Part shown: piece after piece, positions 1,231 through 37,436 of the stretch
How the letters are laid out: each line of letters starts with the position of its first letter
How positions within the stretch are numbered: the stretch's first letter is position 1
DNA from: Laetmonice hystrix
Taxonomy: Eukaryota
Assembly (NCBI GenBank): GCA_965235115.1
Contig: OZ249453.1
Coordinates: forward strand, 17,050,001-17,114,000
Direction of reading: 5' to 3'
Length of the DNA stretch: 64,000 nt
The notes under the pieces: generated by a model
Database searches by the model: none
What the model saw: the letters and a program-made list of their open reading frames with translations, nothing else
What the model was told of the DNA's origin: nothing
Made by a program: the position numbers and the translations under genes

Positions 1231-1493
1231 TGCAAACGGTTAGCGTTCTTTTGAGGACGCGTAAGTTCCGTTGTAACGGGTACCTCTTATTTTGACCAGA
1301 TTGCGGATTTTCTAACTGGCGCCTTTTACTAGATTTACCAATTTGAGACTAAACTACACTAACCCGAAGCCTATCCTTAACCCTAACCGTGTCAGTAATT
1401 AGTCAATTTACATAAAATATAAACCTGGTGAAAATAGGTGGTACCCGTTACAACGGAACTTTCACGTCTCCAAAATAACATAAACCATGTGCA
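1231..1493. mobile_element. MITE-like element with terminal inverted repeats
   Basis: Perfect 22-bp inverted match AAGTTCCGTTGTAACGGGTACC (1263-1284) / 1440-1461, extending imperfectly to ~1231 and ~1493; no coding capacity; internal CCTATCCTTAACCCTAACC motif. No TSD resolved. Confidence 0.75.
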
Positions 1494-4408
1494 AACCCTA
1501 CATAATTTCGGCCCGTTTGTGCAATTCCTCTTTAAAGTGGCACCCCAAATTCATCAAATACTTACCTTTGAATCCCAGCGACGCCATGTTAAAATTACAG
1601 GTTCGAGAGATAAGCGGAAGTACTTTAAAAATGGAATGGAACAATATGTCTCCGCTTTCCTAACCACTTATAATTTTAGTAGGCTAATTTGACAACAAAA
1701 ATGTTTAAATGTTGACTTGCATGGGTCTTGTTGAAATTAACAGAAATGTGAAAACTAAGCCTCAGATTATTTTCCTCTTCCAATATTTCCAGATATGGAG
1801 ACAGGTAAATCTTTTGAAAACCTACCATCACTGTCATGATAAACTCACATTATGTGGCCGTGAATGTGTTTGATTTGCGATCGAATATATTTGAGGAAAC
1901 CCACCATGTATTACGGTTCTGAAACTAGTTTAACTTACCGAAACTAGATTCGCTGGCCTTTTATTTCAGTCTAAAGAAAGCAAGCAAAAGAAATCGGCAT
2001 GGCATGGGTAGTTTTAGAGGCTTGTGTGCAATTTAAATAATAAACAAATTAAAACTTAACGCTCTATTTTTTTTAACTATCAGCTTTGAATTTGTGTCTT
2101 ACAGATATTGCGACAGGTAATACTGAAGGTAGCATAATAGTATATCAGAATGAAATATGACTGCACTAAAACTGTGATGGCCCCTGCACTGCAAGGAGAC
2201 ATTGATATTGGTTGTATATTTCATAGACGCTACATACAGTTAGGACACTTTGAATTTAACTTGATCTGTTTCAGCGTCGGATCCAGGGTTTCGAGAACTG
2301 GGTTGGGGTTATACAGGGTTATATGGCATGGATACCTGATTCACGTAGTATTGTAGCCATAGTACACGTTTCCCAAGTATTGTGTTTTGATCGTTGTCCT
2401 TCACACATTCAAAGGGAGCTAAGAATGCTATGAACTTTACACTTGAAACAGCCAAGGTTATGGCGAGTACAATTGATAGACAAATTGATGGTATTAAGAT
2501 ACGGCGGTTGCAGCATGTGCACTTTATAATACAGATTGCACATGCCCTGGGCACCCCTTACAGAACCTGGCCTGCACTCGTTTATAATACAGACAATGTC
2601 AGTCATATTGCACTTATATAACTATTGGCATGTACACTTCCGGCAAATATACTTCCTGCCTGTACACACTATACATATACCGTGATGTATGGCCTGTACT
2701 AGTCGTGCAGTTTTTATTTATTGTATTAATCGTTCCCACATGTACAGGAACGGGAAACCGTTGGGTTTTCTTCCCTCTCAATGATGTTGTAATAAGGTGG
2801 GTGATTAAAACGAAGGGTGTAAAAACTCAAGTCAGCTACGAAACAATATTGGTGTCCGTAGTTCTATAGCTGACATTTAACTTACAACGACCGGAAAGGC
2901 CAGTGGTATATTGTTTTAAAAAGGTCTGAGATGAGACTCAGAATCTTGCCTGTATTTTACATGTATTTTATTTGATCTGTTCAGCTTTGTTATTTCCGGA
3001 TTGTCAAAGCTACAGTTCTTTTCGATTTCGACATGCATTTACTGTATCCAATGGTGCCTTGTTTACGATGAGTTTGTGAGCTTCATTGGTTGATCCGATA
3101 CTGCATATTATCCTTTTGTTTAGGCAGCCATGTGAGAGAAAAAGTTTAAAGTGCACATTCGGGTAATATCTTGTAGTATAGGAGTTTGTATTTATATGTC
3201 GGCAGAAGGTGTCAGGTGATGAAAATGTCCTCGGAGTTTCAACTTTGTCTTATGCCAACCATGTGAACCATCATGTGAACCGGAAGTCATCTAGATTGAT
3301 ATCCCAGCAGCCTTCACGTCTTCCGTGATCTCATTGCGTTACTTTCTGACGGGGTAAACAAAATGGTCAAAAGTCAGGCTGACGTTTTGGCGGCACTCCA
3401 CTGTTCGGGACACTTAGCAATAGTTAGATGCGGTAGCTCTTGGTATATGAAGCAGGTGGTTAGTCGTTTTTGTCTACGACAATCTCAATAACCATAATAA
3501 AATCAACGGAATATTATACATTAACACAGGGCTGAAAGGGAAACTCCTTAAGGGATTGGGAAATTCATTACCCCTTTCTGGGGAAATTCTAAAATTTGAG
3601 AATGGTGTGTTCTAGAAAAACCATAAGAGGAAAACGCCATGAAACAAGTTTTTAACTCTGATTACAATGTACAACGCATATTGTTTGTCTGATATAATAA
3701 TTATTATTACAAAAAACTCTTTACCAACAAATGATCATTCCTGTGACTCACTTGAACTTAATATTCCATTCAGGAACTCAGGGGTCTCTGGAGAAATTTA
3801 CAGTCGTAACAGAAGCCTCTTTATGCGAACATATTTGTTGTTGTTGTTGTTATCAACAATAAACTCGGAGATGCCTGGATAGGAGAGGACCTCCAAGCTG
3901 ATGTCGGCGGTTTTTGTCACGGCTGAAGAGTCATTGTATGGCAGAGTTCACAATGACGGTGTTGAATTATAGATATAGAAGCTTGTTGCCGAAGCCACCG
4001 TGACAACATTGGATACTCGCTTCTGACCTATGCTGGTATCGACTGCCTAACACCCGCTCTTTGCCTGAATATTACATTATACGCCATTATTGTTATTGCT
4101 GGGAAACTTCTATTTGTAGGTTTGTGCCTGCATAGCATAGAACGGTGTTTGGGTAGATAATTAGTGGTGGGAATTTGACCTCAGTGAGGTCAGACCGACG
4201 TGGGTGCGGGTAGAATGCATGTGATATTTGGTCATCGGTTCGAGAGTGGATTGGGAGCGTCGACACCCGGCAGCAGCAATATGTATACGAACACAGTATC
4301 CTCGGCCAGGGCAGTCCATTACAAATGGTAAGTTTTCTTCTTATTCTTTTAATCTTTCTACCGTAAACTAGGTCCGGGTTTACAAAGCTCTGCTTGGACA
4401 AACCAATC

Positions 4409-4525
4409 GGAGCCCGGTTTGTCAAAGCGTAAGTCTTCCTTAAGTTACGCTTAACGTTTCTGATTAGTTTCTGCTTTGACCAGCCAAACAGAAGCCTTAC
4501 GCTTAAGCTTAAGAAGAACTTAAGC
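4409..4525. mobile_element. Degenerate palindromic MITE remnant, possibly related to 62490-62580 and the GGCCCGGTT-ended MITEs
   Basis: Starts GGAGCCCGGTTTGTCAAA; 4432-4520 is an imperfect palindrome rich in CTTAAG; GCTTAACGTTTCTGATTAGTT resembles GCTTAAGGTTTCTGACTGGTT near 62555. Confidence 0.4.
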
Positions 4526-4705
4526 TGAATGTAAAGTGAATGCAGGGCATTACAGTCGGCCAGGCAAACTAGCATGGAAGCAAGGGGCAGAGTCCCATGG
4601 AAAAATTGTCCCCCTAGAGAAAGACCCTTCCAAAAATACTCGCTCCCTAGTTAGCAATGGCCATAATCGATACATGCTGGGGCTCCTCGAGATTCTGGGG
4701 CGCCA

Positions 4706-5168
4706 GGACATTTGGTCTCGAGTGGTGTGAGGACATTTGGTCTCGAGTGGTGTGAGGACATTTGGTCTCGAGTGGTGTGAGGACATTTGGTCTCGAGTGG
4801 TGTGAGGACATTTGGTCTCGAGTGGTGTGAGGACATTTGGTCTCGAGTGGTGTGAGGACATTTGGTATCGAGTGGTGTGAGGGCATTTGGTCTCGAGTGG
4901 TGCGAGGACATTTGGTCTCGAGTGGTGTGAGGACATTTGGTCTCGAGTGGTGTGAGGACATTTGGTCTCGAGTGGTGTGAGGACATTAAAGTCTCGAGTG
5001 GTGTGAGGACATTTGGTCTCGAGTGGTGCCAGGACATTTGGTCTCGAGTGGCGTGAGGACATTTGGTCTCGAGTGGTGCCAGGACATTTGGTCTCGAGTG
5101 GTGTGAGGACATTTGGTCTCGGGTGTTGTGAGGACATTTGGTCTCGAGTGGTGCCAGGACATTTGGTC
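4706..5168. repeat. Minisatellite, 25-bp unit GGACATTTGGTCTCGAGTGGTGTGA, ~18.5 copies
   Basis: Direct tandem periodicity (unit starts 4706, 4731, ...). Confidence 0.97.
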
Positions 5169-7756
5169 CAAACACCGTTACTTTGTCCCTCGGGGCATTT
5201 GTCCCATTATTTGCCCTATTATAGGGATATGTTTATGATAAAATAATGTACTCCTGGAGCACATACATAATGTATAGGCCTACAATAGGCATGGCTATAT
5301 GCAGCTGCCTGCAAATTGGCAAAATGCCGAGACGCTCCAAAAGCTGTGTCTTCGCTGGTTTGGACGAAGTACTCACCAGTGTGATATATTCCGTACACTT
5401 GTCTCAACTGTAGTATTGTCAGCGGGTTCACACTTCCCTAGCGGAGACCCCGGAGGGCTTGATACACGCACTGCTAATGACGCCATCTGGCGGGATGTGA
5501 TCCACCTTCCCTTCTCATCAAGCACTGAGACCCTGATCGCCTTTACCATCATCTATCCCTGACCCTCCAAGCCCTTTGACCTTAGCGTCAGTCTATATCA
5601 CGCTGCTCACTTTGAGATAAGAGAGAGAAGATTTCGCAAAATAAAAAGAACAAATATCTCGGTTCTGACTGTTTTAGTCACGGCATGCACAAAGAGCAGC
5701 GCTGTTTCAGACATGGTTCATGTAATGGTTGATATAGCCACACGGCAGTAGAGTGGACGGAAGGTTTGTGTGATAACACTCCGTGGAGATCTCCAGCCAG
5801 ACCTTCTGTCCGATAACACCATCTCAAGGTCAACTGTGGTTGAAAAAACAACATCTCAAGGTCAACAGTGACTGAGAGAACAACAGTGAGTGAACGCATC
5901 AAACAAACTGTTCCCATCTGAACTGAAATCCATCAAAGGATGGCCTTATCAGTGCCCACATGAAAGGGTTAGATATTGTAGGAGTAAAAAGAGAGTGTTG
6001 TGAAGGTGGAGACCATTTGAGGGGGGGGGGGGGGGGAGGGATGCAACATTCGACGTCAGGAGATAGAGGGCTCTGGGATAGCAAAGAACGGGGTTAGTCA
6101 ACAGTGTGGTTCATTCATTTGACGCTAGGTGGCAGCACAGCTAGTCTCAAACCGCCCACAATCTTTGTCGGCGTTCACGGGCCTGAACAGGTTTTATTAA
6201 TAAGATAATCCTCCTGTCATTGTAATAGTGATTTCCATGAATTATGTGGAATTTTAAAAAGGCAATTAAGGTGCTTTCTCATTAGAGAACTGAGAGAGCT
6301 TGAGCCGCAGATCCGTATCGTGGTTTGATAAAACTAAATTAAGTGAAATCCATGGCATGACAAAAGTACAGTTAACGTATTGTCAAACTTTAAATGAGGT
6401 GCTGGATTCGTCCCCGGCATAATGTACAAAACGTCTCAACGACTTTATATTTAGTAGTCAGTAATTACTATATATTGTATGCTCCCTTGGAGTAATCAAT
6501 CGGTTTAAAATACCACCTTAGGTATGTAACGGTATGCTTAGAAACCTGGTGACTTTAAGTTACAAACTTCTGAACAGGTTATAACGCAATGCCCGAATAG
6601 TTAATAAAATAGTCAATTATTGAAGCCGACTGGACCAAGCGGTGCCATGCGTGACTGTGGAAGGCGAGCGTTCAACACATTGCGAGAGTAAGTGACAAAG
6701 TGAATCGTTAAACTGGGAAAATATGGATAGAATCGATTCTAGTCAAGCTAATTATTAGGAAATAAAGAGGGTTGTTAATGAAATACGAGGAATCGATATT
6801 TTGCAATAAGAAATGTTAATTTGTAATATGGTGTAATATTTCATTGCGACTTATGCTATGTGCTAGTAGTCTTGGGGGTTTATAGAATAGTGCGCTGACA
6901 TTAAAGATTCTTTAGGATCTATTTTAAGAGAGATATAATTTTGTGTTTGCTTCACTAATCTCTGTTAGAGACGATTTACCACATGACTCTGTCTGGCCCA
7001 TGGCCCCGCCAGCAGACAGGCTAATCAAGAAGACGACATTGCCAGAAATTGGCTTGAAAGATACAACACACACGAGTGATAAACCATGCTTGACGTGTGT
7101 GATTTCCCATGGATCCTCTGAAACCTAAAGCAATGACCTGCACCTTCATCTGAATAATAACGTGAGGTTTTTTTACAGTTCAGTCTATGTTTGCCAAGTT
7201 TTATTAAACCAGCCAGCACCCACGAAGTAATTCCTGACTGAACCATACTTTGTTTGGTAAACAGGAACATCCCTAGCTCGAGTAACAGCCGAGCTGACTG
7301 TAGGAAACACGACCACACCATGGTCGCAACTTCTCCCTGGTATTGACATTTATGTTATGTCGAATGTGATTGGTCAAGAATGGGCTGGCAACTTGTTCCG
7401 TGCCATAAGTAAGGCCATTCTCCGGTCAATATCAGGTTCTGTGAGCGTGTTAACACACAGGAGGGCTGCTTGCCCAGACCGGAATCGTTGTGAGGAACTG
7501 CGATGGGAGGAGGAGGGCGAGATTCAAACATTGTCTATCGATTCATACTCTGGGTTCTGCCCTCCGTGTCTGTCCCAGCGTCTTATATTGGGTTGGGGAA
7601 GTAAATGGGATCTTCTGTATGACTAACGGCTTGGCCTGAATGTAAGAATCGATGTCATCATGTGGCTCAGCTTCTCTATGATGTTGCCAGATAAACTTGA
7701 GTAATACGTCACATTGCTACAAAACTGGGCGATTGGTCACATTGGTAGAGAATGAA

Positions 7757-8445: not shown

Positions 8446-11294
8446 GACTGGCCGACCTCCGGGACGTGCGGTGGGGTTCGCTGGGTGGCGGGTTGGGACT
8501 GGCCGAGACGTGCGGTGGGGTTCGCTGGGTGGCGGGTTGGGACTGGCTGACATCCGGGACGTGCGGTGGGGTTCGCTAGGTGGCGGGTTGGGACTGGCCG
8601 AGACGTGTGGTGGGGTTCGCTGGGTGGCGGGTTGGGACTGGCCGAGACGTGCGGTGGGGTTCGCTGGGTGGCGGGTTGGGACTGGCCGAGACGTGCGGTG
8701 GGGTTCGCTGGGTGGCGGGTTGGGACTGGCCGACCTCTGAGACGTGCGGTGGGGTTCGCTGGGTGGCGGGTTGGGACTGGCCGACCTCTGAGACGTGCGG
8801 TGGGGTTCGCTGGGTGGCGGGTTGGGACTGGCCGAGACGTGCGGTGGGTTCGCTGGGTGGCGGGTTGGGACTGGCCGACCTCTGAGACGTGCGGTGGGGT
8901 TCGCTGGGTGGCGGGTTGGGACTGGCCGACCTCTGAGACGTGCGGTGGGGTTCGCTGGGTGGCGGGTTGGGACTGGCCGAGACGTGCGGTGGGTTCGCTG
9001 GGTGGCGGGTTGGGACTGGCCGAGACGTGCGGTGGGGTTCGCTGGGTGGCGGGTTGGGACTGGCCGAGACGTGCGGTGGGGTTCGCTGGGTGGCGGGTTG
9101 GGACTGGCCGACCTCTGAGACGTGCGGTGGGGTTCGCTGGGTGGCGGGTTGGGACTGGCCGACCTCCGGGACGTGCGGTGGGGTTCGCTGGGTGGCGGGT
9201 TGGGACTGGCCGAGACGTGCGGTGGGGTTCGCTGGGTGGCGGGTTGGGACTGGCCGAGACGTGCGGTGGGGTTCGGTGGGTGGCGGGTTGGGACTGGCCG
9301 AGACGTGCGGTGGGGTTCGCTGGGTGGCGGGTTGGGACTGGCCGAGACGTGCGGTGAGGTTCGCTGGGTGGCGGGTTGGGACTGGCCGACCTCCGGGACG
9401 TGCGTAGGGGTTCGCTGGGTGGCGGGTTGGGACTGGCCGAGACGTGCGGTGGGGTTCGCTGGGTGGCGGGTTGGGACTGGGCGACCTCCGAGACGTTCGG
9501 TGGGGTTCGCTGGGTGGCGGGTTGGGACTGGCCGACCTCCGGGACGTGCGCTGGGGTTCGCTGGGTGGCGGGTTGGGACTGGCCGAGACGTGCGGTGGGG
9601 TTCGGTGGGTGGCGGGTTGGGACTGGCCGACCTCTGAGACGTGCGGTGGGGTTCGCTGGGTGGCGGGTTGGGACTGACCGACCTCTGAGACGTGCGGTGG
9701 GGTTCGCTGGGTGGCGGGTTGGGACTGGCCGAGACGTGCGGTGGGGTTCGCTGGGTGGCGGGTTGGGACTGGCCGAGACGTGCGGTGGGTGAGGTTCGCT
9801 GGGTGGCGGGTTGGGACTGACCGAGACGTGCGGTGGGGTTCGCTGGGTGGCGGGTTGGGACTGGCCGACCTCTGAGACGTGCGGTGGGGTTCGCTGGGTG
9901 GCGGGTTGGGACTGACCGACCTCTGAGACGTGCGGTGGGGTTCGCTGGGTGGCGGGTTGGGACTGGCCGAGACGTGCGGTGGGGTTCGCTGGGTGGCGGG
10001 TTGGGACTGGCCGAGACGTGCGGTGGGGTTCGCTGGGTGGCGGGTTGGGACTGGCCGGGACGTGCGGTGGGGTTCGCTGGGTGGCGGGTTGGGACTGGCC
10101 GAGGCGTGCGGTGGGGTTCGCTGAGTGGCTGGTTGGGACTGGTCGAGACGTGCGGTGGGGTTCGCTGGGTGGCGGGTTGGGACTGGCCGACCTCCGGGAC
10201 GTGCGGTGGGGTTCGCTGGGTGGCGGGTTGGGACTGACCGAGACGTGCGGTGGGGTTCGCTGGGTGGCGGGTTGGGACTGGCCGAGACGTGCGGTGAGGT
10301 TCGCTGGGTGGCGGGTTGGGACTGGCCGGGACGTGCGGTGGGGTTCGCTGGGTGGCGGGTTGGGACTGGCCGGGACGTGCGGTGGGGTTCGCTGGGTGGC
10401 GGGTTGGGACTGGCCGAGACGTGCGGTGGGGTTCACTGGGTGGCGGGTTGGGACTGGCCGAGACGTGCGGTGGGGTTCACTGGGTGGCGGGTTGGGACTG
10501 GCCGAGACGTGCGGTGGGTGGGGTTCGCTGGGTGGCGGGTTGGGACTGGCCGAGACGTGCGGTGAGGTTCGCTGGGTGGCGGGTTGGGACTGGCCGAGAC
10601 GTGCGGTGGGTGGGGTTCGCTTGGTGGCGGGTTGGGACTGGCCGAGACGTGCGGTGGGTGGGGTTCGCTGGGTGGCGGGTTGGGACTGGCCGAGACGTGC
10701 GGTGGGTGGGGTTCGCTGGGTGGCGGGTTGGGACTGGCCGAGACGTGCGGTGGGGTTCGCTGGGTGGCGGGTTGGGACTGACCGACCTCCGAGACGTGCG
10801 GTGGGGTTCGCTGGGTGGCGGGTTGGGACTGGCCGAGACGTGCGGTGGGTGAGGTTCGCTGGGTGGCGGGTTGGGACTGGCCGAGACGTGCGGTGAGGTT
10901 CGCTGGGTGGCGGGTTGGGACTGACCGAGACGTGCGGTGGGGTTCGCTGGGTGGCGGGTTGGGACTGACCGAGACGTGCGGTGGGGTTCGCTGGGTGGCG
11001 GGTTGGGACTGACCGAGACGTGCGGTGGGGTTCGCTGGGTGGCGGGTTGGGACTGGCCGAGGCGTGCGGTGGGGTTCACTGGGTGGCGGGTTGGGACTGA
11101 CCGAGACGTGCGGTGGGGTTCGCTGGGTGGCGGGTTGGGACTGGCCGAGACGTGCGGTGGGGTTCGCTGGGTGGCGGGTTGGGACTGGCCGAGACGTGCG
11201 GTGGGGTTCGCTGGGTGGCGGGTTGGGGCTGGCCGAGACGTGCGGTGGGGTTCGCTGGGTGGCGGGTTGGGACTGGCCGAGACGTGCGGTGGGG
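8446..11294. repeat. GC-rich, strand-skewed minisatellite, 44-bp unit (48- and 51-bp variants), ~60 copies
   Basis: Unit GGACTGGCCGAGACGTGCGGTGGGGTTCGCTGGGTGGCGGGTTG; variants with ACCTCTG/ACCTCCG or GGTG insertions. Confidence 0.98.
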
Positions 11295-11355
11295 TGGGGT
11301 GGGGTGGGTTGGGGTGGGGTGGGGTGGGGGTGGGGGTGGCGGGTGGCGGGTCGGG
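11289..11355 (+). other. G-quadruplex-prone tract ending the 44-bp array
   Basis: (GGGGT)n-like run with more than ten G3-G5 tracts. Confidence 0.8.
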
Positions 11356-14827: not shown

Positions 14828-16013
14828 GGAAATTGTAAATTTACTTCTAAACTTGCAAACTGCGGAAAGAAACCGATCGATGGGTATACATTAGACTGCA
14901 GGAACCTGCAATCTACCCACTGGCACTGACCCAGCAATGGTTTCCACTGTGAACAATCTACCCACTGACCCAGCAATGGTTTCCACTGTGAACAATCTAC
15001 CCACTGGCACTGACCCAGCAATGGTTTCCACTGTGAACAATCTACCCACTGACCCAGCAATGGTTTCCACTGTGAACAATCTACCCACTGACCCAGCAAT
15101 GGTTTCCACTGTGAACAATCTACGCACTGGCACTGACCCAGCAATGGTTTCCACTGTGAACAATCTACGCACTGACCCAGCAATGGTTTCCACTGTGAAC
15201 AATCTACGCACTGGCACTGACCCAGCAATGGTTTCCACTGTGAACAATCTACCCACTGACCGAGCAATGGTTTCCACTGTGAACAATCTACCCACTGACC
15301 CAGCAATGGTTTCCACTGTGAACAATCTACCCACTGACCCAGCAATGGTTTCCACTGTGAACAATCTACCCACTGACCCAGCAATGGTTTCTACTGTGAA
15401 CAATCTACCCACTGACCCAGCAATGGTTTCCACTGTGAACAATCTACTCACTGGCACTGACCCAGCAATGGTTTCCACTCTGATGACGGAAGAGTGTGTC
15501 TCTTTCTTCGGAAAGCTTTCTGCCCTCTCAAACGTCCATCCATCTCAATTCCAAGTGGGAGGTTTCGCCTTCAACTCCACTGAGCAATATTATGTATACA
15601 TGTATACCGGAAAGCTAACTGTCAATATGATGTGGCTGCAGAAAGGGTACTTTGTACAACCGAACCAGCGATCATAAAAAACATGCGAGATCCCGCCTCA
15701 CTGCGATTGGAATAACATAAAACACGCTGTCATAAAAAAGTATACAGGGAGAAGTTTACTCAAAAACAAACAGATTGAGGAGGCAACTTCGGAAAGAAAA
15801 TGTTAATGGCAGTCCAATACCTAACTTCCTCTCCGTACGAGATCAATAGTTCTTGTCTGGATGGAATTTCACCGATTCAGAAATATGGGTCTGGCTCTAA
15901 TGCTGGTCCATGTCGGGAGGGACCGTTGTTTCATAAATTCACATTATTTTATCAAAGAGTACCGTGGAGGTGCTTCCAAATCTTCTATGGGCAAAAAGAA
16001 AATGGCTGTGTGA
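14828..16013 (+). pseudogene. Degraded NADAR (YbiA/DUF1768-family) domain coding sequence with frameshifts, interrupted by an in-frame minisatellite
   Basis: Ordered motifs across frames: CVSFFGKLSALSNVHPSQFQVGGFAFNSTEQYY (15495-15593); shift to YRKANCQYDVAAERVLCTTEPAIIKNM (from 15605); DWNNIKHAVIKK (from 15705); shift to REKFTQ (15746-15763); SSPYE (15827-15841); NL(x)MGKKKMAV* (to 16013). Matches the NADAR pattern F..LSNF....F...G..F.S.EQY....KA....A..IL....P..K; W; KF.QN; E.SP.D; N.LG..LM.VR. By-eye alignment only. Confidence 0.75.
14909..15479 (+). repeat. Minisatellite, 39/45-bp units encoding DPAMVSTVNNLPT(GT), 14 copies
   Basis: Both unit lengths are multiples of 3; the array is continuous with the NADAR-like frame (ORF 14937-15677). 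Confidence 0.97.
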
Positions 16014-16240
16014 AATCTCCTTGAAGAATAGCAATGGCAGGTTGCTACGACCCCAGCCAGCGCCCCTGGCCGGCTACCTTTGGTGTAGAGGTGTTCATTG
16101 TGAGGGGACTATAAAGGTTATCGTTATCAAGCCGGTTTGCTACTCGCGACCTGTTATCTTATCTTAATCAGACCAGTCAGGAGATAAATCCCCCACTCCC
16201 ACATCCAGCCTCACTGGCCAAGCGTGTCCATCAGGAAACC

Positions 16241-16254: not shown

Positions 16255-16817
16255 CGTAACTATTGCCCGTTGTTAGCGTGCAGTGCCCGTGAAATCTCCC
16301 AGACACGGGTAGACTGTCCGATTGGGCGCTTGTCAGCTAATCACTGTGGTGACCTGGGCAGATTATCCGCTGGATTAGTAGATTATAGAGACGCGTGGGA
16401 CATACGGTAAGGGGGGCGGAGGATGGGAGGAACTCAAGATGGGTTCCTGGCCGAGGCTGATAATAAACACTGACGGTTTTAGACCGAAATCAGATATTAG
16501 ATTTTTAAAATTTTACAAAGTTATTCAGTGAGGAGACGGAAGCGTCTTCCTCCCAGAGTAATTAATATTCATCCATAGAAAATCTCCACATAACCCCCCC
16601 CCCCCAAACACCGATACATATATACAATTATAGCAGTCAGACTAGTCTCTGCGCCATCTTATTTCAAACCAAATCAGTTATACGCTCATTGTGAGGATAT
16701 GGCCATTTTAAAATATAGTCTAGATTTTTAGCGGAAGATACAGAGAGGCTTTAGATGAATGTTGCTTGGCTTCAGCCACATCGAACATAACATAATTTCA
16801 ACTTTGTGTATTTTTGC

Positions 16818-18688
16818 CTGAGTGAATCCTGAATTGAGCGGACATGTAGGGAGTTTTCCCTGAGTGAATCCCGAATTGAGCGGACATGTATATTTTTCCC
16901 TGTGTGAATCCTGAATTGAGCGGACATGTAGAGATTTTTCCCTGTGTGAATCCTGAATTGAGCGGACATGTAGGGCGTTTTCCCTGTGTGAATCCTGAAT
17001 TGAGCGGACATGTAGGGAGTTTTCCCTGTGTGAATCCTGAATTGAGCGGACATGTAGGGCGTTTTCCCTGTGTGAATCCTGAATTGAGCGGACATGTAGA
17101 GATTTTTCCCTGTGTGAATCCCGAATTGAGCGGACATGTATATTTTTTCCTGTGTGAATCCGGAATTGAGCGGACATGTAGGGAGTTTTCCCTGTGTGAA
17201 TCCCGAATTGAGCGGACATGTAGGGATTTTTACCTGTGTGAATCCTGAATTGAGCGGACATGTGTATTTTTCCTTGTGTGAATCCTGAATTGAGCGGACA
17301 TGTAGGGATTTTTCCCTGTGTGAATCCTGAATTGAGCGGACATGTAGGGATTTTTCCATGGGTGAATCCTGAATTGAGCGGACATTTAGGGATTTTTCTC
17401 TGTGTGAATCCTGAATTGAGCGGACATGTAGGGAGTTTCCCCTGTGTGAATCCTGAATTGAGCGGACATGTAGGGATTTTTCTCTGTGTGAATCCTGAAT
17501 TGAGCGGACATGTAGGGATTTTCCCCTGTGTGAATCCTGAATTGAGCGGACATGTAGGGATTTCTCCCTGGGTGAATCCTGAATTGAGCGGACATGTAGG
17601 GATTTTTCCCTGTGTGAATCCTGAATTAAGCGGACATGTAGGGATTTCTCCCTGTGTGAATCCTGAATTGAGCGCACATGTAGAGATTTTTCCCTGTGTG
17701 AATCCTGAATTGAACGGACATGTAGGGAGTTTTCCCTGTGTGAATCCTGAATTGAGCGGACATGTAGGAATTTTTCCCTGTGTGAATCCTGAATTGAGCG
17801 GACATGTAGGGAGTTTTCCATGGGTGAATCCTGAATTGAGCGGACATGTAGGGAGTTTTCCCTGTGTGAATCCTGAATTGAGCGGACATGTAGGGAGTTT
17901 TCCCTGGGTGAATCCTGAATTGAGCGGACATGTATATTTTTCCCTGGATGAATCCTGAATTGAGCGGACATGTAGGGAGTTTTCCCTGTGTGAATCCTGA
18001 ATTGAGCGGACATGTAGGGATTTTTCCCTGTGTGAATCCTGAATTGAGCGGACATGTAGGTATTTTCCCTGTGTGAATCCTGAATTGAGCGGACATGTAG
18101 AGATTTTTCTCTGTGTGAATCCTGAATTGAGCGGACATGTAGGGATTTTCCCCTGTGTGAATCCTGAATTGAGCGGACATCTAGGGAGTTTTCCCTGTGT
18201 GAATCCTGAATTGAGCGGACATGTAGAGAGTTTTCCCTGTGTGGATCCTGAATTGAGCGGACATGTAGGGAGTTTTCCCTGTGTGAATCCTGAATTGAGC
18301 GGACATGTAGGGATTTTTCCCTGTGTGAATCCTGAATTGAGCGGACATGTAGGTATTTTCCCTGTGTGAATCCTGAATTGAGCGGACATGTAGGTATTTT
18401 CCCTGTGTGAATCCTGAATTGAGCGGACATGTAGAGATTTTTCTCTGTGTGAATCCTGAATTGAGCGGACATGTAGGGATTTTCCCCTGTGTGAATCCTG
18501 AATTGAGCGGACATCTAGGGAGTTTTCCCTGTGTGAATCCTGAATTGAGCGGACATGTAGAGAGTTTTCCCTGTGTGGATCCTGAATTGAGCGGACATGT
18601 AGGGAGTTTTCCATGGGTGAATCCTGAATTGAGCGGACATGTAGGGAGTTTTCCCTGGGTGAATCCTGAATTGAGCGGACATATAGGG
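16818..18688. repeat. Minisatellite, 42-bp unit (40-41-bp variants), ~45 copies, with a 334-bp higher-order duplication
   Basis: Unit TGTGAATCCTGAATTGAGCGGACATGTAGGGAGTTTTCCCTG; diagnostic variants recur 334 bp apart (e.g. GTGGATCCTG at 18241 and 18575). Confidence 0.98.
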
Positions 18689-20798
18689 AAGAGTTAATTT
18701 CGCGCAACCCGCTTTCAGTATGAGAAGGCCGCTGGCACTGCAGCCTCATTAGGTCTGGCGCTGCTAACGATGTCTCTGATAGGACTTGGCCATACTTGAT
18801 ATTGATTTCTAGATCATATAAGTGCGAAGTCTGGACTATGTAGGTGGCTGCTTCTATTTGAAGTATGGGAAAGAGGGTGGGAAGGGATAAGTCTAGGGAG
18901 CCCAAAGATGTTCAGCCTGCAAGTGCCACGAATAATTTTTCAATTCGCTTTTGCTACACGGTTTTATAGCCAGCATTTTATGCGAGAATTTATGTGTTAC
19001 CAGCAGGGGACGTGTCTGGTCCAGTATGTTTAGAATGAAGGCGTTTTTATTGTGTAGAGGCTAGGCATAAAACATAAAACGATGTTTTTAAGTTGATAGT
19101 GTGTGTAGTGGCAGACCGTCTTGATTTCCGTCCGCGGAGTAGCTCAAATAATTGCATTTCGTATTTTACATGTTATTGATATTACCCATTAGGAGCAGCG
19201 TAGCAGAACCGATCATTTACATGTCTTCCGCTCTCATGTCGAGCTATGATGATTTCAACTTGAAAGCGTTTATTGTGCTAAATTGATTTTCAACACGAAA
19301 GGCAAACAACTCCATTCATGAAACGTTTTTACTTTGAAGTCCCAGCGTAGTGTAATTGCAGATGAAACATTTTGGTCGTCTGCCTAAGTTGTACAATGTT
19401 TGCTTGGAGCATCAAATACTTACCACTTATAGTTTGTAATCCCGGTAGTAATTGTTGTCAATTACAACATATGTTTGCTTCCTCGGGGGGAGGGTGGAGA
19501 AGTCCGGTAACAGCCCAGCAATGTGTCTAGGGGTGTGGAAAGGGCACACGCCCAAATTGTTCGTGGTGTTACGACAATTTGGCCATCGATTTTTTTGTCC
19601 TTTGGGGAACATCTTGAGACACTCGCCAGAGACGAGTTGTAAAATGGGGTTGACAGGGGGAGGGTGAGAGGCAGGGTGTGCAAACTCACCCAGACGTCGC
19701 TGGGTAAAAGGGCACCATAGAAGGGTGCTTTATGCACGTTAACTTTGAAGGCATCCCAGACTTCTATGTGTTCTGTCGTGACAATTCACGTTTGTCAGCT
19801 TTTCGTCCACGGAAATGGTTACGACAGGAAACCGTTACAACGCATTGCCAGCGGCTTTCTAGACGCTACACAAACATGTTTTTCTTCGCCAATGAATGCT
19901 TGGCACAAATTCGCTGCAGGACTTCTCTTTTTTCGGACGGAGTCGTTAATGTTTCTGGAATCAGTACATCGGTCATTCCATTAGTCTGCGGTTGTTGTTT
20001 GACAAGAGGAATGTTCAGTGGTCACTGACATCAAGTTGAAATGCATCCGCTGAGTCGAAAGGGTTAACAATTAAACGACAGTTCTTTGATATCAACCGTT
20101 TTGTACCTTTCTTTTCAAAACTGCGTGCGTCCATACTCTTTCTGGAGCGATCGTGCGTCTATAGCTTTCTACATCAAAGATTACTATATGTTGCTAGGAG
20201 ACAAATTTCAAAGACTCCTGTTGTAATTGCGTATTGGAAAGGCTTCAGAAGAAGACGAGTTCGACATATTGACCCTTTGCGCCCCCGGTCTCTTTGCCAG
20301 TCAATGTGTGCTTGCTATGGCCGTGTTTGATATTCATGATGTGACTATATTAATGAATGACTACATTCTGTTGTGGATGACATCAGTTTATTATAGTTGT
20401 CATTTATCCATATTTGAAAATGATCAATTTTCATTTAGATGGACTCCTTGAAGATTGAGTTTTCAATATAAACATTCCTTTTATCTAAGATTGTGGTATT
20501 TCATTATTCTATAACAACACATTCTTTATTCTTGTAAAGAATTTTTTCACTGCCAAGTTTGTAATTAATGTTATGGGTTTTGTCTCCTTTCATAATCTAA
20601 CTCGAGGAAAATTTATTTTAGCCACTACAAGTTCATTATGATTTTGATAATGTTATTTTGTTTCATAAAAGATAGCCAATGGAGTTCATATAAAGGCCTT
20701 CAGGCATTTATCATTTGGAGCGTATTATGAATTACCGATTGTAAGTTAGAAATGCCATCAAATCGAAAATATTGCACGGCAGAAGAATTTCTCCCCTC

Positions 20799-26627: not shown

Positions 26628-29600
26628 CGCCCCAGTTGACCTCCTACAATATGTGGTACACCCGTAACCGCCCCAGTTCACCTCCTACAATATGTGGTAC
26701 ACCCGTAACCGCCCCAAGTGACCTCCTACAATATGTGGTACACCCGTAACCGCCCCAGTTGACCTCCTACAATATGTGGTACACCCGTAACCGCCCCAGT
26801 TGACCTCCTACAATATGTGGTACACCCGTAACCGCCCCAGTTGACCTCCTACAATATGTGGTACACCCGTAACCGCCCCAGTTGACCTCCTACAATATGT
26901 GGTACACCCGTAACCGCCCCAAGTGACCTCCTACAATATGTGGTACACCCGTAACCGCCCCAGTTGACCTCCTACAATATGTGGTACACCCGTAACCGCC
27001 CCAAGTGACCTCCTACAATATGTGGTACACCCGTAACCGCCCCAAGTGACCTCCTACAATATGTGGTACACCCGTAACCGCCCCAGTTGACCTCCTACAA
27101 TATGTGGTACACCCGTAACCGCCACAAGTGACCTCCTACAATATGTGGTACACCCGTAACCGCCCCAGTTGACCTCCTACAATATGTGGTACACCCGTAA
27201 CCGCCCCAAGTGACCTCCTACAATATGTGGTACACCCGTAACCGCCCCAGTTGACCTCCTACAATATGTGGTACACCCGTAACCGCCCCAAGTGACCTCC
27301 TACAATATGTGGTACACCCGTAACCGCCCCAAGTGACCTCCTACAATATGTGGTACACCCGTAACCTCCCCAAGTGACCTCCTACAATATGTGGTACACC
27401 CGTAACCGCCCCAGTTGACCTCCTACAATATGTGGTACACCCGTAACCGCCCCAAGTGACCTCCCACAATATGTGGTACACCCGTAACCGCCCCAGTTGA
27501 CCTCCTACAATATGTGGTACACCCGTAACCGCCCCAGTTGACCTCCTACAATATGTGGTACACCCGTAACCGCCCCAGTTGACCTCCTACAATATGTGGT
27601 ACACCCGTAACCGCCCCAGTTCACCTCCTACAATATGTGGTACACCCGTAACCGCCCCAGTTCACCTCCTACAATATGTGGTACACCCGTAACCGCCCCA
27701 GTTGACCTCCTACAATATGTGGTACACCCGTAACCGCCCCAGTTGACCTCCTACAATATGTGGTACACCCGTAACCGCCCCAATTGACCTCCTACAATAT
27801 GTGGTACACCCGTAACCGCCCCAAGTGACCTCCTACAATATGTGGTACACCCGTAACCGCCCCAGTTGACCTCCTACAATATGTGGTACACCCGTAACCG
27901 CCCCAGTTGACCTCCTACAATATGTGGTACACCCGTAACCGCCCCAGTTGACCTCCTACAATATGTGGTACACCCGTAACCGCCCCAGTTGACCTCCTAC
28001 AATATGTGGTACACCCGTAACCGCCCCAGTTGAACTCCTACAATATGTGGTACACCCGTAACCGCCCCAATTGACCTCCTACAATATGTGGTACACCCGT
28101 AACCGCCCCAAGTGACCTCCTACAATATGTGGTACACCCGTAACCGCCCCAGTTGGCCTCCTACAATATGTGGTACACCCGTAACCGCCCCAATTGACCT
28201 CCTACAATATGTGGTACACCCGTAACCGCCCCAAGTGACCTCCTACAATATGTGGTACACCCGTAACCGCCCCAATTGACCTCCTACAATATGTGGTACA
28301 CCCGTAACCGCCCCAAGTGACCTCCTACAATATGTGGTACACCCGTAACCGCCCCAATTGACCTCCTACAATATGTGGTACACCCGTAACCGCCCCAATT
28401 GACCTCCTACAATATGTGGTACACCCGTAACCGCCCCAGTTGACCTCCTACAATATGTGGTACACCCGTAACCGCCCTAATTGACCTCCTACAATATGTG
28501 GTACACCCGTAACCACCCCAGTTGACCTCCTACAATATGTGGTACACCCGTAACCGCCCCAAGTGACCTCCTACAATATGTGGTACACCCGTAACCGCCC
28601 CAAGTGACCTCCTACAATATGTGGTACACCCGTAACCGCCACAAGTGACCTCCTACAATATGTGGTACACCCGTAACCGCCCCAGTTGACCTCCTACAAT
28701 ATGTGGTACACCCGTAACCGCCCCAGTTGACCTCCTACAATATGTGGTACACCCGTAACCGCCACAAGTGACCTCCTACAATATGTAGTACACCCGTAAC
28801 CGCCCCAGTTGACCTCCTACAATATGTGGTACACCCGTAACCGCCCCAGTTGACCTCCTACAATATGTGGTACACCCGTAACCGCCACAAGTGACCTCCT
28901 GCAATATGTGGTACACCCGTAACCGCCCCAGTTGGCCTCCTACAATATGTGGTACACCCGTAACCGCCCCAGTTGACCTCCTACAATATGTGGTACACCC
29001 GTAACCGCCCCAGTTGACCTCCTACAATATGTGGTACACCCGTAACCGCCCCAGTTGACCTCCTACAATATGTGGTACACCCGTAACCGCCCCAGTTGAC
29101 CTCCTACAATATGTGGTACACCCGTAACCGCCCCAGTTGACCTCCTGCAATATGTGGTACACCCGTAACCGCCCCAGTTGACCTCCTGCAATATGTGGTA
29201 CACCCGTAACCGCCCCAAGTGACCTCCTACAATATGTGGTACACCCGTAACCGCCCCAGTAGACCTCCTACAATATGTGGTACACCCGTAACCGCCCCAG
29301 TTGACCTCCTACAATATGTGGTACACCCGTAACCGCCCAAGTGACCTCCTACAATATGTGGTACACCCGTAACCGCCCAAGTGACCTCCTACAATATGTG
29401 GTACACCCGTAACCGCCACAGTTGACCTCCTACAATATGTGGTACACCCGTAACCGCCCCAGTTGACCTCCTACAATATGTGGTACACCCGTAACCGCCC
29501 CAGTTGACCTCCTGCAATATGTGGTACACCCGTAACCGCCCCAGTTGACCTCCTACAATATGTGGTACACCCGTAACCGCCCCAGTTGACCTCCTACAAT

Positions 29601-29864
29601 ATGTGGTACACCCGTAACCGCCCCAATTGACCTCCTACAATATGTGGTACACCCGTAACCGCCCCAGTTGACCTCCTACAATATGTGGTACACCCGTAAC
29701 CGCCCTAATTGACCTCCTACAATATGTGGTACACCCGTAACCGCCCCAAGTGACCTCCTACAATATGTGGTACACCCGTAACCGCCCCAGTTGACCTCCT
29801 ACAATATGTGGTACACCCGTAACCGCCCCAGTTGACCTCCTACAATATGTGGTACACCCGTAAC
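26628..29864. repeat. Minisatellite, 41-bp unit GACCTCCTACAATATGTGGTACACCCGTAACCGCCCCAGTT, ~79 copies
   Basis: Highly homogeneous array; variation concentrated in CAGTT/CAAGT/CAATT. Confidence 0.99.
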
Positions 29865-33751: not shown

Positions 33752-35450
33752 GGGATTTCTTCATACCAGAGCTGTATCACAGTCTGACTTAGTGTATTCT
33801 CACGGACCAGAGATTTCTTCATACCAGAGCTGTATCACAGTCTGACTTAGTGTATTCTCATGGCCCAGAGATTTCTTCATACCAGAGCTGTATCACAATC
33901 TGACTTAGTGTATTCTCACGGACCAGAGATTTCTTCATACCAGAGCTGTATCACAGTCTGACTTAGTGTATTCTCACGGACCAGAGATTTCTTCATACCA
34001 GAGCTGTATCACAGTCTGACTTAGTGTATTCTCACGGACCAGGGATTTCTTCATACCAGAGCTGTATCACAGTCTCACTTAGTGTATCCTCACGGACCAG
34101 AGATTTCTTCATACCAGAGCTGTATCACAGTCTGACTTAGTGTATTCTCACGGACCAGAGATTTCTTCATACCAGAGCTGTATCACAGTCTGACTTAGTG
34201 TATTCTCATGGACCAGAGATTTCTTCATACCAGAGCTGTATCACAGTCTGACTTAGTGTATTCTCACGGACCAGAGATTTCTTCATACCAGAGCTGTATC
34301 ACAGTCTGACTTAGTGTATTCTCATGGACCAGAGATTTCTTCATACCAGAGCTGTATCACTGAATCACAGTCTGACTTAGTGTATTCTCACGGACCAGAG
34401 ATTTCTTCATACCAGAGCTGTATCACAGTCTGACTTAGTGTATTCTCACGGACCAGAGATTTCTTCATACCAGAGCTGTATCACTGAATCACAGTCTGAC
34501 TTAGTGTATTCTCACGGACCAGAGATTTCTTCATACCAGAGCTGTATCACAGTCTGACTTAGTGTATTCTCATGGACCAGAGATTTCTTCATACCAGAGC
34601 TGTATCACAGTCTGACTTAGTGTATTCTCACGGACCAGAGATTTCTTCATACCAGAGCTGTATCACAGTCTGACTTAGTGTATTCTCACGGACCAGAGAT
34701 TTCTTCATACCAGAGCTGTATCACAGTCTGACTTAGTGTATTCTCACGGACCCGAGATTTCTTCATACCAGAGCTGTATCACAGTCTGACTTAGTGTATT
34801 CTCACGGACCCGAGATTTCTTCATACCAGAGCTGTATCACAGTCTGACTTAGTGTATTCTCACGGACCAGAGATTTCTTCATACCAGAGCTGTATCACAG
34901 TCTGACTTAGTGTATTCTCATGGACCAGAGATTTCTTCATACCAGAGCTGTATCACAGTCTGACTTAGTGTATTCTCATGGACCAGAGATTTCTTCATAC
35001 CAGAGCTGTATCACAGTCTGACTTAGTGTATTCTCACGGACCAGAGATTTCTTCATGCCAGAGCTGTATCACAGTCTGACTTAGTGTATTCTCACAGACC
35101 AGAGATTTCTTCATACCAGAGCTGTATCTCAGTCTGACTTAGTGTATCCTCATGGACCAGAGATTTCTTCATACCAGAGCTGTATCACAGTCTGACTTAG
35201 TGTATTCTCACGGACCAGAGATTTCTTCATACCAGAGCTGTATCACAGTCTGACTTAGTGTATTCTCACGGACCAGAGATTTCTTCATACCAGAGCTGTA
35301 TCACAGTCTGACTTAGTGTATTCTCACGGACCAGAGATTTCTTCATACCAGAGCTGTATCACCATCTGACTTAGTGTATTCTCACGGACCAGAGATTTCT
35401 TCATACCAGAGCTGTATCACAGTCTGACTTAGTGTATTCTCACGGACCAG
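33752..35450. repeat. Minisatellite, 58-bp unit, ~29 copies
   Basis: Unit AGAGATTTCTTCATACCAGAGCTGTATCACAGTCTGACTTAGTGTATTCTCACGGACC; two units carry an 8-bp insertion TGAATCAC (34361, 34485). Confidence 0.99.
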
Positions 35451-37436
35451 AAATGCATTACTCGCTCCATATACTTACAGAATATGAAGGCCATTGTTAG
35501 AGTTCTCGCTTTGATAAATTCAATCTGTACTAGTAATAGAAGTATATTATATTTAGCCAGCTAAGAAGTAGATTAAGGTCTACACGTGTAGGTCTACATG
35601 TAGAGTAAAATTAATGCCGCCAGAGACTTTATACAAGTCACGGATTTTCTAAGCAATGTTCTAGCCGAAGTTAATTGTCATTTCAATTTAAACTACAAGC
35701 CAGGAATGAAAGCGTTTTCCCTATAGAACCATCTGGGATTGATCGTTAGATACCCATGGAATGCCACATAACGGAGTGTACCACGCCTTGACGAGATCCA
35801 AAAAAAGATCAGACACACTTTGAGGTTGTATATATACCGGTACGTGTGGAAGGTTGCATGCATTCACTTTGATTCGATCAATATAAAAACATCATGCCTT
35901 ACGATTACGAACTCAGCTCGTTCCGTGGAGTGAACCGTCCGGTTGGACACCTGAGAATGACGCCGGATGGAATAAAGAAGATATATGATGCCTTATATTC
36001 ATATTTATTATTCCACACGCCACTCCGAAGGTCGACCCTGTTTCTCATATAAGTTGGATAGGTCTGTTTGGCACAGATGTAAGTCATTCCACCACTGTAG
36101 GGATCTCTTGGCGATGGTCATGTGCCTGCCTATACTCCCAGGTTCTGTTTAAACAGAGAAGCCACTCGCGTGTTTGGCGGCTATGCCAGGCTGATGCTCT
36201 ATCTTTCAAAATCTCATGAATTAGCCGTCGATCATATCCGCCAGTTTTGTCTCTGGAAATGGAAATTATTTATGTCTGGTAAGATCTTGGAGGAAGACCA
36301 GTGTGCTTATCTTTGTGAGATGACCTCTTAGTTTGTTAATAACTCAAACAGTAACTATCATCCCATCCCGTAAAACAGCGTCAAACCTCAGGATAGTGCC
36401 TCCTGTAAGCTACTCGATCAAAATACCTTTGAGGCCTTATAATGAAATATGTATGGCATCTTAATTCGTCATCCTTTCTCGTTCTTGTCGACTGGTTCCG
36501 AAAATGGAAATTATTTTTAATAAAGTTGAATCAGGGAAATTCACGAGTGAATGTGGCATTAGAGAAAGACGGCCGAATGAAAAGATTGTCACACTTGATG
36601 GATGAAAAACGAAGCTGTTTTAAATGAACGTTAAGGAACGTATTCATGACTGAGGTTTGCTCAGAGACAACAGCCATTTTCATTCATAAAAAAATGACGG
36701 GACTAATAAATAAAACGGTGCCAGATTTATTTAGGGACGAGTTGCATATTTCGAGATGAATACCATCTTCGTTTTGCGTGGGATTCGATACTCGATAACA
36801 ACTTCCGCCTGATCTCTAGTTATTTTGTGATCGCTATAAAGGACTTATAATAACCAGAGAAAAGTCAAATGTAGCAACCAGCAAATTCTATTTCAGGCAA
36901 TTCACGCATGAGACAGGATTCAATGGGAAAGGACATCAGCCACGTAACCTCTTGCGGTATCTCAGGCCTAATGCTACAGGCCGAAAATAGGTTAAACATT
37001 TGCATAATTTAAAGGCGAGAGATGATATCGAGCCTGCCTTGGTCCCTTAACAATATTGGGTTTCACTGAGGCATGATCCAAACGGCTTTGTTTTAATCTA
37101 CCAGGCGGGTAGGTGGCCTTGAAGTCAGGTTTTAGATTGAGCCCTCGGTAACCTTTCAGTACCCGCCCAATATAAGCTGACGAATCACAAAGATTTGATG
37201 AGCAGGCAGGTTCATGTTACATGAACCATCAAGGATAAAGACATCGAAATCTTAGTGTTTTTTTCATATAAGATTTTAGATAAATTCATGCAACATGTAT
37301 TGTTTTACAGCGGATTATCAAGGGTTTTGTTAGGGGACTTTTGTTTTGCACGTTCCGTCCAACACGTGGGACCGTTGACCCTGAGATGCATGTGAATGGT
37401 CATCTCTTGGGGTCTGACCTCAAAACATGATCCCCG

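What the first reader, a model, noticed from the sequence alone, without database searches (positions are those of the whole stretch)
15483..16013. Hidden NADAR (YbiA-family) domain pseudogene in animal DNA
Seen: reading across frameshifts gives, in order, FFGKLSALSNVHPSQF, STEQYY, YRKA..DVAAERVLCTTEPAIIK, DWNNIK, EKFTQ, SSPYE and NL(x)MGKKKMAV followed by TGA (possibly a CGA Arg that mutated). Established: NADAR proteins include YbiA, an N-glycosidase acting on riboflavin-pathway intermediates, and hydrolases that remove ADP-ribose from guanine as antitoxins of DarT1; their role in animals is poorly understood. Inference: an intronless, decayed NADAR copy. The ORF track shows only its first third.
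Basis: partly seen in the sequence, partly recalled or inferred. Interest (0 to 1): 0.8.

Follow-up and report, generated by a model that had tools for sequence, protein, structure and literature searches.

The report
Dead LINE retrotransposon NADAR-domain fragment
This is a decayed fragment of the NADAR enzyme domain carried by the first gene (ORF1) of a LINE retrotransposon, not a broken host gene; it is ordinary debris in a genome that holds hundreds of intact copies.

Summary
NADAR homology is real and far above chance for about the first two thirds of the domain (15484 to about 15809). A frameshift-aware alignment to a profile of this genome's own NADAR domains scores 82.7 bits, against 14.1 +/- 1.9 for shuffled DNA.

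The interpretation needs one large correction: this is not a pseudogene of a host NADAR gene.
- The genome (627 Mb) gives 741 first-look candidates for Pfam NADAR. All 150 that were scored pass the cut-off.
- Every one I sampled lies in a retrotransposon. Most are LINE ORF1s (coiled coil, RRM-like part, then NADAR) followed by an endonuclease/reverse-transcriptase ORF2. A few lie inside a Gypsy Pol.
- The window's copy carries the LINE-ORF1 linker just upstream of NADAR, and a tree places it inside the LINE ORF1 sequences.
- Its sister copy on contig C1 keeps ORF2 remnants.

The 39/45-bp minisatellite at 14924-15483 is that linker expanded about 14-fold. The relic has four frameshifts and two in-frame stops, and no other LINE part is found in the 64 kb.

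NADAR in oyster LINE ORF1 proteins has already been noted in print (PMC12477816). Other first-stage notes of this scan flagged the same family elsewhere in this genome. Interest is low.

The parts
14876..14923 (+). Probable 5' edge of the relic: end of the ORF1 middle region and start of the linker (IDGYTLDCRNLQS, then LPTGTDP). Marginal evidence.
   Evidence: 12.1 bits against ORF1 profile positions 270-289; 5 of 200 shuffles as high in a narrow, post-hoc test and 81 of 200 in a wide one. DNA homology with the C1 sister copy begins at about 14884.
14924..15483 (+). Minisatellite of 39-bp and 45-bp units, 13.7 copies. It is a tandem expansion of the ORF1 linker codons (TVNNLPT(GT)DPAMVS). Both unit lengths are multiples of 3, so the frame stays open.
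   Evidence: Tandem Repeats Finder, score 876, 90% matches. The unit is present once in the sister copy, L039:4011-4062. It aligns with the linker YTVD.L..LP...DP...ST of intact LINE ORF1s.
15484..15614 (+). NADAR N-terminal part in the frame whose codons start at positions divisible by 3: FFGKLSALSNVH, and STEQYY with the conserved ribose-binding Glu at 15582-15584.
   Evidence: 55.6 bits against the own-genome NADAR profile. tblastn E values of 1e-10 to 1e-7 to LINE ORF1s.
15605..15706 (+). NADAR helix region after frameshift 1 (frame 2): YRKA (Lys at 15611-15613) and DVAAERVLCTTEPAIIKNM.
   Evidence: 10.0 bits as a single piece. Part of the 33.5-bit middle alignment, 0 of 300 shuffles as high.
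15708..15764 (+). WNNIKHAVI (conserved Trp at 15708-15710, frame 0), then KKVYREKFTQ (frame 2). Frameshifts 2 and 3 fall here.
   Evidence: The indel at the A6 run at 15734 is polymorphic in run X2.
15765..15809 (+). NKQIEEATSERKC-stop-W (frame 0, after frameshift 4). This is the last beta-strand with the YbiA-type Glu, then a degenerate D..WG motif interrupted by TAA at 15804-15806. It is the last stretch with demonstrable homology.
   Evidence: DNA alignment with the sister copy, which reads NKQIVETSLDKFWGAG in that frame. Both copies lack roughly 9-12 residues found in intact relatives between KF.Q and this strand.
15810..16013 (+). No demonstrable homology.
   Evidence: Not above shuffles in any test. 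No DNA similarity to the sister copy beyond about 15810.

Best explanation
Window positions about 14876 to 15809 are a non-functional relic of the 3' part of ORF1 of a non-LTR (LINE) retrotransposon. In this genome the ORF1 proteins of many LINE families end in a YbiA-type NADAR domain. The relic keeps the ORF1 linker and roughly the first 80% of the domain.

After insertion it decayed neutrally:
- four frameshifts;
- two in-frame stops;
- loss or unrecognisable divergence of the last helix;
- loss of the rest of ORF1 and of ORF2.

In a region unusually prone to tandem duplication, 39-45 bp of linker codons expanded into a 14-copy minisatellite.

Shown: the homology, the breaks, the origin of the minisatellite unit, and the LINE context of all close relatives. 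Inferred: that the relic does nothing now, and that the parent domain was an active hydrolase of ADP-ribosylated nucleic-acid bases serving the retrotransposon.
For: - Homology and extent: (82.7 to 89.1 bits against shuffles of about 14 +/- 2).
- Genome census: PF08719 gives 741 first-look candidates; 150 were scored and all pass the cut-off, most within open frames of 400-480 aa.
- LINE architecture: ORF1 with NADAR is followed by ORF2 with Exo_endo_phos and RVT_1. 22 of 31 sampled loci show ORF2 within the 1.5-kb flank.
- A public relative of such an ORF1 carries the L1-ORF1 RRM family PF02994 together with PF08719.
- The linker YTV..L..LP...P is shared with LINE ORF1s and absent from the Gypsy version.
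- Tree: the window and the C1 copy are sisters (support 95/87) and sit with LINE families L030 and L009 (94/94), apart from Gypsy.
- The sister copy has ORF2 PHD and RT remnants downstream.
- The breaks are present in independent short-read contigs, with heterozygous SNPs and indels.
- Literature: ORF1 proteins of Tx1 LINEs of Crassostrea gigas contain YbiA-family NADAR domains (PMC12477816).
Against: - No ORF2 and no significant ORF1 N-terminal part is detectable anywhere in the 64-kb window, so the LINE context at this locus is inferred from relatives.
- No poly(A) tail, target-site duplication or 3' UTR was identified.
- Pfam NADAR does not hit the pieces directly, and a PDB sequence search with the best piece finds no NADAR.
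- The nearest intact relatives are only about 38-42% identical over about 115 aligned residues, so the exact parent family is unknown.
Confidence: 0.85

Rival explanations
1. It is a processed or decayed pseudogene of a cellular (host) NADAR gene.
For: It is intronless and decayed, and NADAR genes are reported in molluscs and other invertebrates (PMC11125620). No LINE ORF2 lies beside it in the window.
Against: The ORF1-specific linker lies directly upstream of the domain. The sequence nests within LINE ORF1 sequences. The sister copy has ORF2 remnants. Every NADAR locus inspected in this genome is TE-borne, and no host parent gene was found.
Confidence: 0.05
2. It is a fragment of the NADAR domain of a Gypsy-type LTR retrotransposon Pol, which also exists in this genome.
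For: Gypsy Pol ORFs carry NADAR between protease and RT, and they match the first piece at 36-39% identity.
Against: Overall identity is lower (28%, against 38-42% for LINE ORF1s). The Gypsy upstream sequence lacks the YTV..L..LP linker. Gypsy forms a separate, fully supported clade. No protease, RT or integrase remnants lie nearby.
Confidence: 0.03
3. The 246-aa ORF at 14937-15677 (repeat peptide plus the NADAR N-terminus) is a live, domesticated coding sequence.
For: The frame stays open through the whole minisatellite into the NADAR start.
Against: Both unit lengths are multiples of 3, and two minus-strand frames are equally open (195 and 196 aa), so openness is expected without selection. 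The ORF ends after about 45 NADAR residues and could not fold as the domain. The locus carries heterozygous indels. No run on record as RNA holds the stretch.
Confidence: 0.03
4. It is a chance resemblance, with no real NADAR homology.
For: There is no direct Pfam or PDB hit.
Against: 82.7 to 89.1 bits against a shuffle maximum of 23 to 26. tblastn E of 1e-10 to paralogues. 73% DNA identity to a second decayed copy that retains DKFWGAG.
Confidence: 0.01

Closest known systems
ORF1 proteins of Tx1-type LINEs of the Pacific oyster Crassostrea gigas with a YbiA-family NADAR domain (Repbase entries noted in PMC12477816)
   Same: NADAR sits in the ORF1 position of an APE/RT LINE in an invertebrate genome, and it is of the YbiA type, with Glu in the last strand. 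The intact relatives in this genome have that architecture.
   Different: The window's copy is a broken internal fragment without ORF2. I could not check the LINE clade (Tx1 or other) or the species, because no TE library or taxon label was available.
L1-type (type II) ORF1p: coiled coil, RRM (Pfam Transposase_22, PF02994) and C-terminal domain
   Same: The intact paralogues have coiled-coil-like N-terminal parts (weak bZIP/HALZ-type hits) and an HRLG...RPIIVRF region. A public relative is annotated PF02994 + PF08719.
   Different: NADAR occupies the position of the L1 C-terminal domain. The genome's own ORF1s did not reach PF02994 at E <= 0.01, and none of this N-terminal part survives in the window.
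YbiA / NADAR hydrolases (E. coli YbiA; Phytophthora nicotianae NADAR; DarG1 antitoxins)
   Same: The motif series is the same: SP.SNF, s.EQyy, K, W, KF.Q, last-strand E, D..WG.G, G.N.LG. The ligand-binding residues E43, K50, W89, E125, D130 and W133 of the P. nicotianae enzyme (PMC11543638) have recognisable counterparts.
   Different: Here the domain is fused to a retrotransposon nucleic-acid chaperone instead of standing alone or being paired with a DarT toxin. In the window it is broken: the D of D..WG is replaced, a stop precedes the W, and the last helix is not found.
[quoted passage not shown]
   Same: This genome also has Gypsy Pol ORFs with NADAR between protease and RT.
   Different: The window's relic is not of that kind. 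The animal Gypsy version has His rather than Glu at the last-strand position.

Membership tests
NADAR / YbiA (Pfam PF08719) | Significant match to the family profile | tested here: inconclusive
   Direct hmmscan of eight stop-free pieces gave no PF08719 hit at E <= 10. Indirectly met: 82.7 to 89.1 bits against profiles of this genome's paralogues, which themselves hit PF08719 at 1e-28 to 1e-42.
NADAR / YbiA (Pfam PF08719) | Conserved active-site residues (E43, K50, W89, E125, D130, W133 in P. nicotianae numbering, PMC11543638), with Glu in the last strand marking the YbiA subfamily (PMC11125620) | tested here: inconclusive
   Counterparts are present for E (15582-15584), K (15611-15613), W (15708-15710) and the last-strand E (15777-15782). 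The Asp of D..WG is replaced (SERKC) and the Trp at 15807-15809 follows a TAA stop. The residues lie in two frames.
NADAR / YbiA (Pfam PF08719) | [quoted passage not shown] | tested here: not met
   Four frameshifts, stops at 15804 and 15822, and the last ~35 profile positions not detectable.
LINE (non-LTR retrotransposon) ORF1 relic | ORF1-specific sequence adjoining the domain | tested here: met
   The linker TVNNLPTGTDPAMVST matches YTVD.L..LP...DP...ST of intact ORF1s and is absent from Gypsy Pol. The start at 14876 is marginal.
LINE (non-LTR retrotransposon) ORF1 relic | ORF2 with endonuclease and reverse transcriptase downstream | tested here: not met
   None is found in the 64-kb window. 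It is met in the nearest intact relatives and, as remnants, in the sister copy L039:4638-4867.
LINE (non-LTR retrotransposon) ORF1 relic | Phylogenetic placement among LINE ORF1 NADARs | tested here: met
   IQ-TREE places the window and the C1 copy with L030/L009 (support 94/94), with Gypsy separate at 100/100. Caveats: long branches and only 24 rows.
LINE (non-LTR retrotransposon) ORF1 relic | Insertion hallmarks (3' poly(A) or microsatellite tail, target-site duplication) | not tested
   The 3' part of the element is absent, so there are no hallmarks to look for at this locus.
Processed pseudogene of a host NADAR gene | An identifiable intron-bearing parent gene closer than any TE copy | not tested
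   Only 150 of the 741 candidates were scored by the tool. None of the 30-odd loci inspected was a non-TE gene.

The most novel reading that the evidence does not exclude
The relic is a fossil of a large and still active guild. Many LINE families, and some Gypsy elements, in this animal genome keep a catalytically intact NADAR domain under purifying selection. The domain may strip ADP-ribose from guanine or cytosine bases of the element's RNA or cDNA. That would counter DNA/RNA ADP-ribosyltransferases of the CARP-1/pierisin kind, which are reported to be concentrated in bivalves (PMC12945103). If so, much of what databases list as 'animal NADAR' would be retrotransposon counter-defence, not host metabolism. 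Nothing in my evidence tests the activity or the target. A Scabin-like (PF22596) search of the genome was blank, but its control genomes were blank too.
Probability: 0.2. Interest if true: 0.7.

Novelty: new member of a known kind. Interest (0 to 1): 0.15.

Why it matters
The locus itself matters little: it is one more dead transposon fragment.

Its useful lesson is about annotation. In this genome an isolated NADAR-like stretch should be read as LINE ORF1 debris unless shown otherwise.

The family behind it may deserve attention. Papers on NADAR enzymes state that the role of animal NADARs is unknown (PMC11125620). Here every NADAR locus I inspected is retrotransposon-borne, and the active-site residues are conserved across families that share only 25-40% identity. 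That points to a testable enzymatic role in retrotransposition.

Tried and rejected
- Pfam hmmscan on eight stop-free pieces gave no NADAR hit.
- phmmer of the best 64-aa piece against PDB sequences gave only noise, a methylisomerase at E 0.42.
- A search for the ORF1 N-terminal part upstream used three approaches: a profile of thirteen 400-480-aa ORF1s, a subfamily profile, and low-stringency tblastn. None was above shuffles. Only the 14876-14933 match was marginal.
- A search for ORF2 or Gypsy Pol anywhere in the window found none.
- Three competing readings of 15765-15830 were considered. Frame 2, GGNFGKKMLMAVQ read as the last helix, scores 12 bits, which is no better than shuffles. Frame 1, LRRQL..KENVNGSP, was picked by the subfamily profile. 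Frame 0, NKQIEEATSERKC-stop-W, is the only one backed by DNA homology with the sister copy, so I rejected the other two as chance.
- A same-frame candidate for the last helix (NMGLALMLV, 15882-15908), with the two Trp at the expected spacing, is noted but not significant.
- Sequencing runs: three listed runs of one sample and study hold the stretch, none is on record as RNA, and organism names were coded. Expression and species therefore stay untested.
- A PF22596 (Scabin-like) search of the genome was blank, with silent controls, so it is uninformative.
- One genome search failed as busy and was repeated.

Full report
**What is in the sequence**

On the + strand, a minisatellite of 39- and 45-bp units (14924-15483, 13.7 copies, 90% matches) runs in an open frame into a stretch whose translation looks like the start of a NADAR domain. 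The strings alternate between two reading frames.

**Is it more than chance?**

Pfam's NADAR model found nothing in any of eight stop-free pieces. A PDB sequence search with the best piece found no NADAR either.

The same Pfam model (PF08719), run over the window's whole genome (627 Mb), gave 741 first-look candidates. All 150 that were scored passed the curated cut-off, at E 1e-28 to 1e-42, and most lie within open frames of 400-480 aa.

I built a profile from 23 of these domains and wrote a frameshift-aware local aligner, with dinucleotide-shuffled DNA as control.

| Stretch tested | Score (bits) | Shuffled DNA |
|---|---|---|
| First stop-free piece, 15426-15614 | 55.6 | not run |
| 15484-16100, whole profile | 82.7 | 14.1 +/- 1.9, max 23.1 (n=200) |
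| Middle, 15600-15800 | 33.5 | 11.0 +/- 1.7, 0 of 300 as high |
| 15484-16013, subfamily profile | 89.1 | 14.6 +/- 2.3 |
| Last third, 15770-16100, profile positions 119-180 | 12.1 | 11.4 +/- 1.7, 79 of 300 as high |

The last third stays at chance level under every variant I tried. SSPYE and MGKKKMAV-TGA are not supported.

**What the NADAR copies of this genome are**

- The intact paralogues are ORF1s of non-LTR retrotransposons. Each has an N-terminal coiled-coil-like part, an HRLG...RPIIVRF region, a linker (YTV..L..LP...P) and a C-terminal NADAR domain.
- ORF1 is followed by an ORF2 with Exo_endo_phos and RVT_1 domains. In some families ORF2 begins with a PHD finger.
- 22 of 31 sampled loci show ORF2 within the 1.5-kb flank. 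Most of the rest belong to families where ORF2 lies just beyond the flank.
- A public relative of one such ORF1 is annotated with the L1-ORF1 RRM family PF02994 together with PF08719.
- Several families have near-identical intact copies on different contigs. This suggests recent activity.
- Two loci are Gypsy-type Pol ORFs with NADAR between protease and RT.
- A 2025 paper on Ectocarpus transposons notes that ORF1 proteins of Tx1 LINEs of Crassostrea gigas in Repbase contain YbiA-family NADAR domains (PMC12477816).

**Where the window's copy belongs**

- It carries the LINE-ORF1 linker directly upstream of the domain. The Gypsy version lacks that linker.
- Over about 115 aligned residues it is 38-42% identical to LINE ORF1s and 28% to Gypsy.
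- In a maximum-likelihood tree it is sister to a second decayed copy on contig C1 (support 95/87). The pair groups with LINE families L030 and L009 (94/94), apart from Gypsy. The branches are long and the sample is small.
- The C1 copy (L039:3999-4419) is 73% identical in DNA over 378 aligned positions. It is also broken, but it retains DKFWGAG.
- Downstream, the C1 copy keeps remnants of an ORF2 PHD region and of RT. Upstream it has a marginal ORF1 match.
- In the window itself no ORF2, no Gypsy Pol and no significant ORF1 N-terminal part can be found.

**The minisatellite**

- The C1 copy holds the repeat unit exactly once, at the position of the ORF1 linker.
- The unit translates to TVNNLPT(GT)DPAMVS, which aligns with YTVD.L..LP...DP...ST of intact ORF1s. 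The array is therefore the linker, tandemly expanded.
- The open frame needs no selection. Both unit lengths are multiples of three, and two minus-strand frames are open as well.
- The whole window is packed with at least 17 unrelated minisatellites. The expansion looks like a regional tendency.

**State of decay**

- Along the best path there are four frameshifts: between 15593 and 15605, at about 15707, at about 15734 and at about 15765.
- There is a TAA stop at 15804-15806 and another at 15822-15824.
- Counterparts of the ligand-binding residues described for the Phytophthora enzyme (PMC11543638) are recognisable for both Glu, the Lys and the first Trp. The Asp of D..WG is replaced, and the second Trp follows a stop.
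- DNA homology with the C1 copy fixes the reading of 15765-15809 as NKQIEEATSERKC-stop-W. It also exposes two alternative frame readings of the same DNA as chance matches of about 10-12 bits.
- Both copies share a deletion of roughly 9-12 residues between KF.Q and the last strand.
- Contigs from three short-read runs of one sample reproduce the breaks. They differ from the window at 8 SNPs and two one-base indels, as expected for a neutral, heterozygous locus.
- No RNA run was available.

**Mechanism**

The relic most likely does nothing. For the parent family, the active-site residues are conserved across families only 25-40% identical, which argues that the enzyme activity matters to the element.

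Characterised NADARs remove ADP-ribose from guanine and cytosine in DNA and RNA (PMC11543638, PMC12945103). The Ectocarpus paper suggests that the retrotransposon NADAR domains process the RNA intermediates of transposition. A counter-defence role against CARP-1-like transferases, which are reported mainly in bivalves, is my own speculation. I could not test it; a Scabin-like profile search was blank, and so were its controls.

**Verdict**

The object is a new member of a known kind, and interest is low. Earlier first-stage notes of this scan on the same genome had already pointed to NADAR in a LINE ORF1 position, and to a possible retroelement origin for this very locus.

Noticed in passing
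L038 (G000:C8:28852000-28861999), ORF 1255-6192 minus strand; also G000:C1:23020367: A Gypsy-type Pol ORF of 1646 aa has a NADAR domain (PF08719, 5e-29) between the aspartyl protease and RT. In the alignment its last-strand catalytic position is His (VHACR-DKFWG), the residue reported for phage NADARs, where the LINE copies have Glu. NADAR in Gypsy Pol is described for a brown alga; I found no report for an animal.
   Followed up: partly
window 4705-64000: There are at least 17 different minisatellite arrays (periods 18-102 bp, up to 79 copies) in 64 kb, for example 8459-11295, 16810-18689, 26628-29864 and 33754-35451. This is an unusually tandem-repeat-prone region.
   Followed up: no
G000 genome-wide; examples L003-L010, L012/L013, L017-L019: Hundreds of intact LINE ORF1-NADAR genes exist. 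Several families have near-identical copies on different contigs, which suggests currently or recently active elements.
   Followed up: partly
L041:5011-6096 and L042:5551-6084: The LINE subfamily nearest to the window's relic has a PHD finger at the start of ORF2, ahead of the endonuclease.
   Followed up: no
window 15502 and 15734; SNPs at 15506, 15534, 15609, 15744, 15858, 15861, 15941: Short-read contigs of three runs of one sample differ from the assembly by one-base deletions and SNPs. This looks like heterozygosity of about 1.5% within the relic.
   Followed up: no
window about 22.7-24.0 kb: A run of 594 N (gap or masked) lies here.
   Followed up: no
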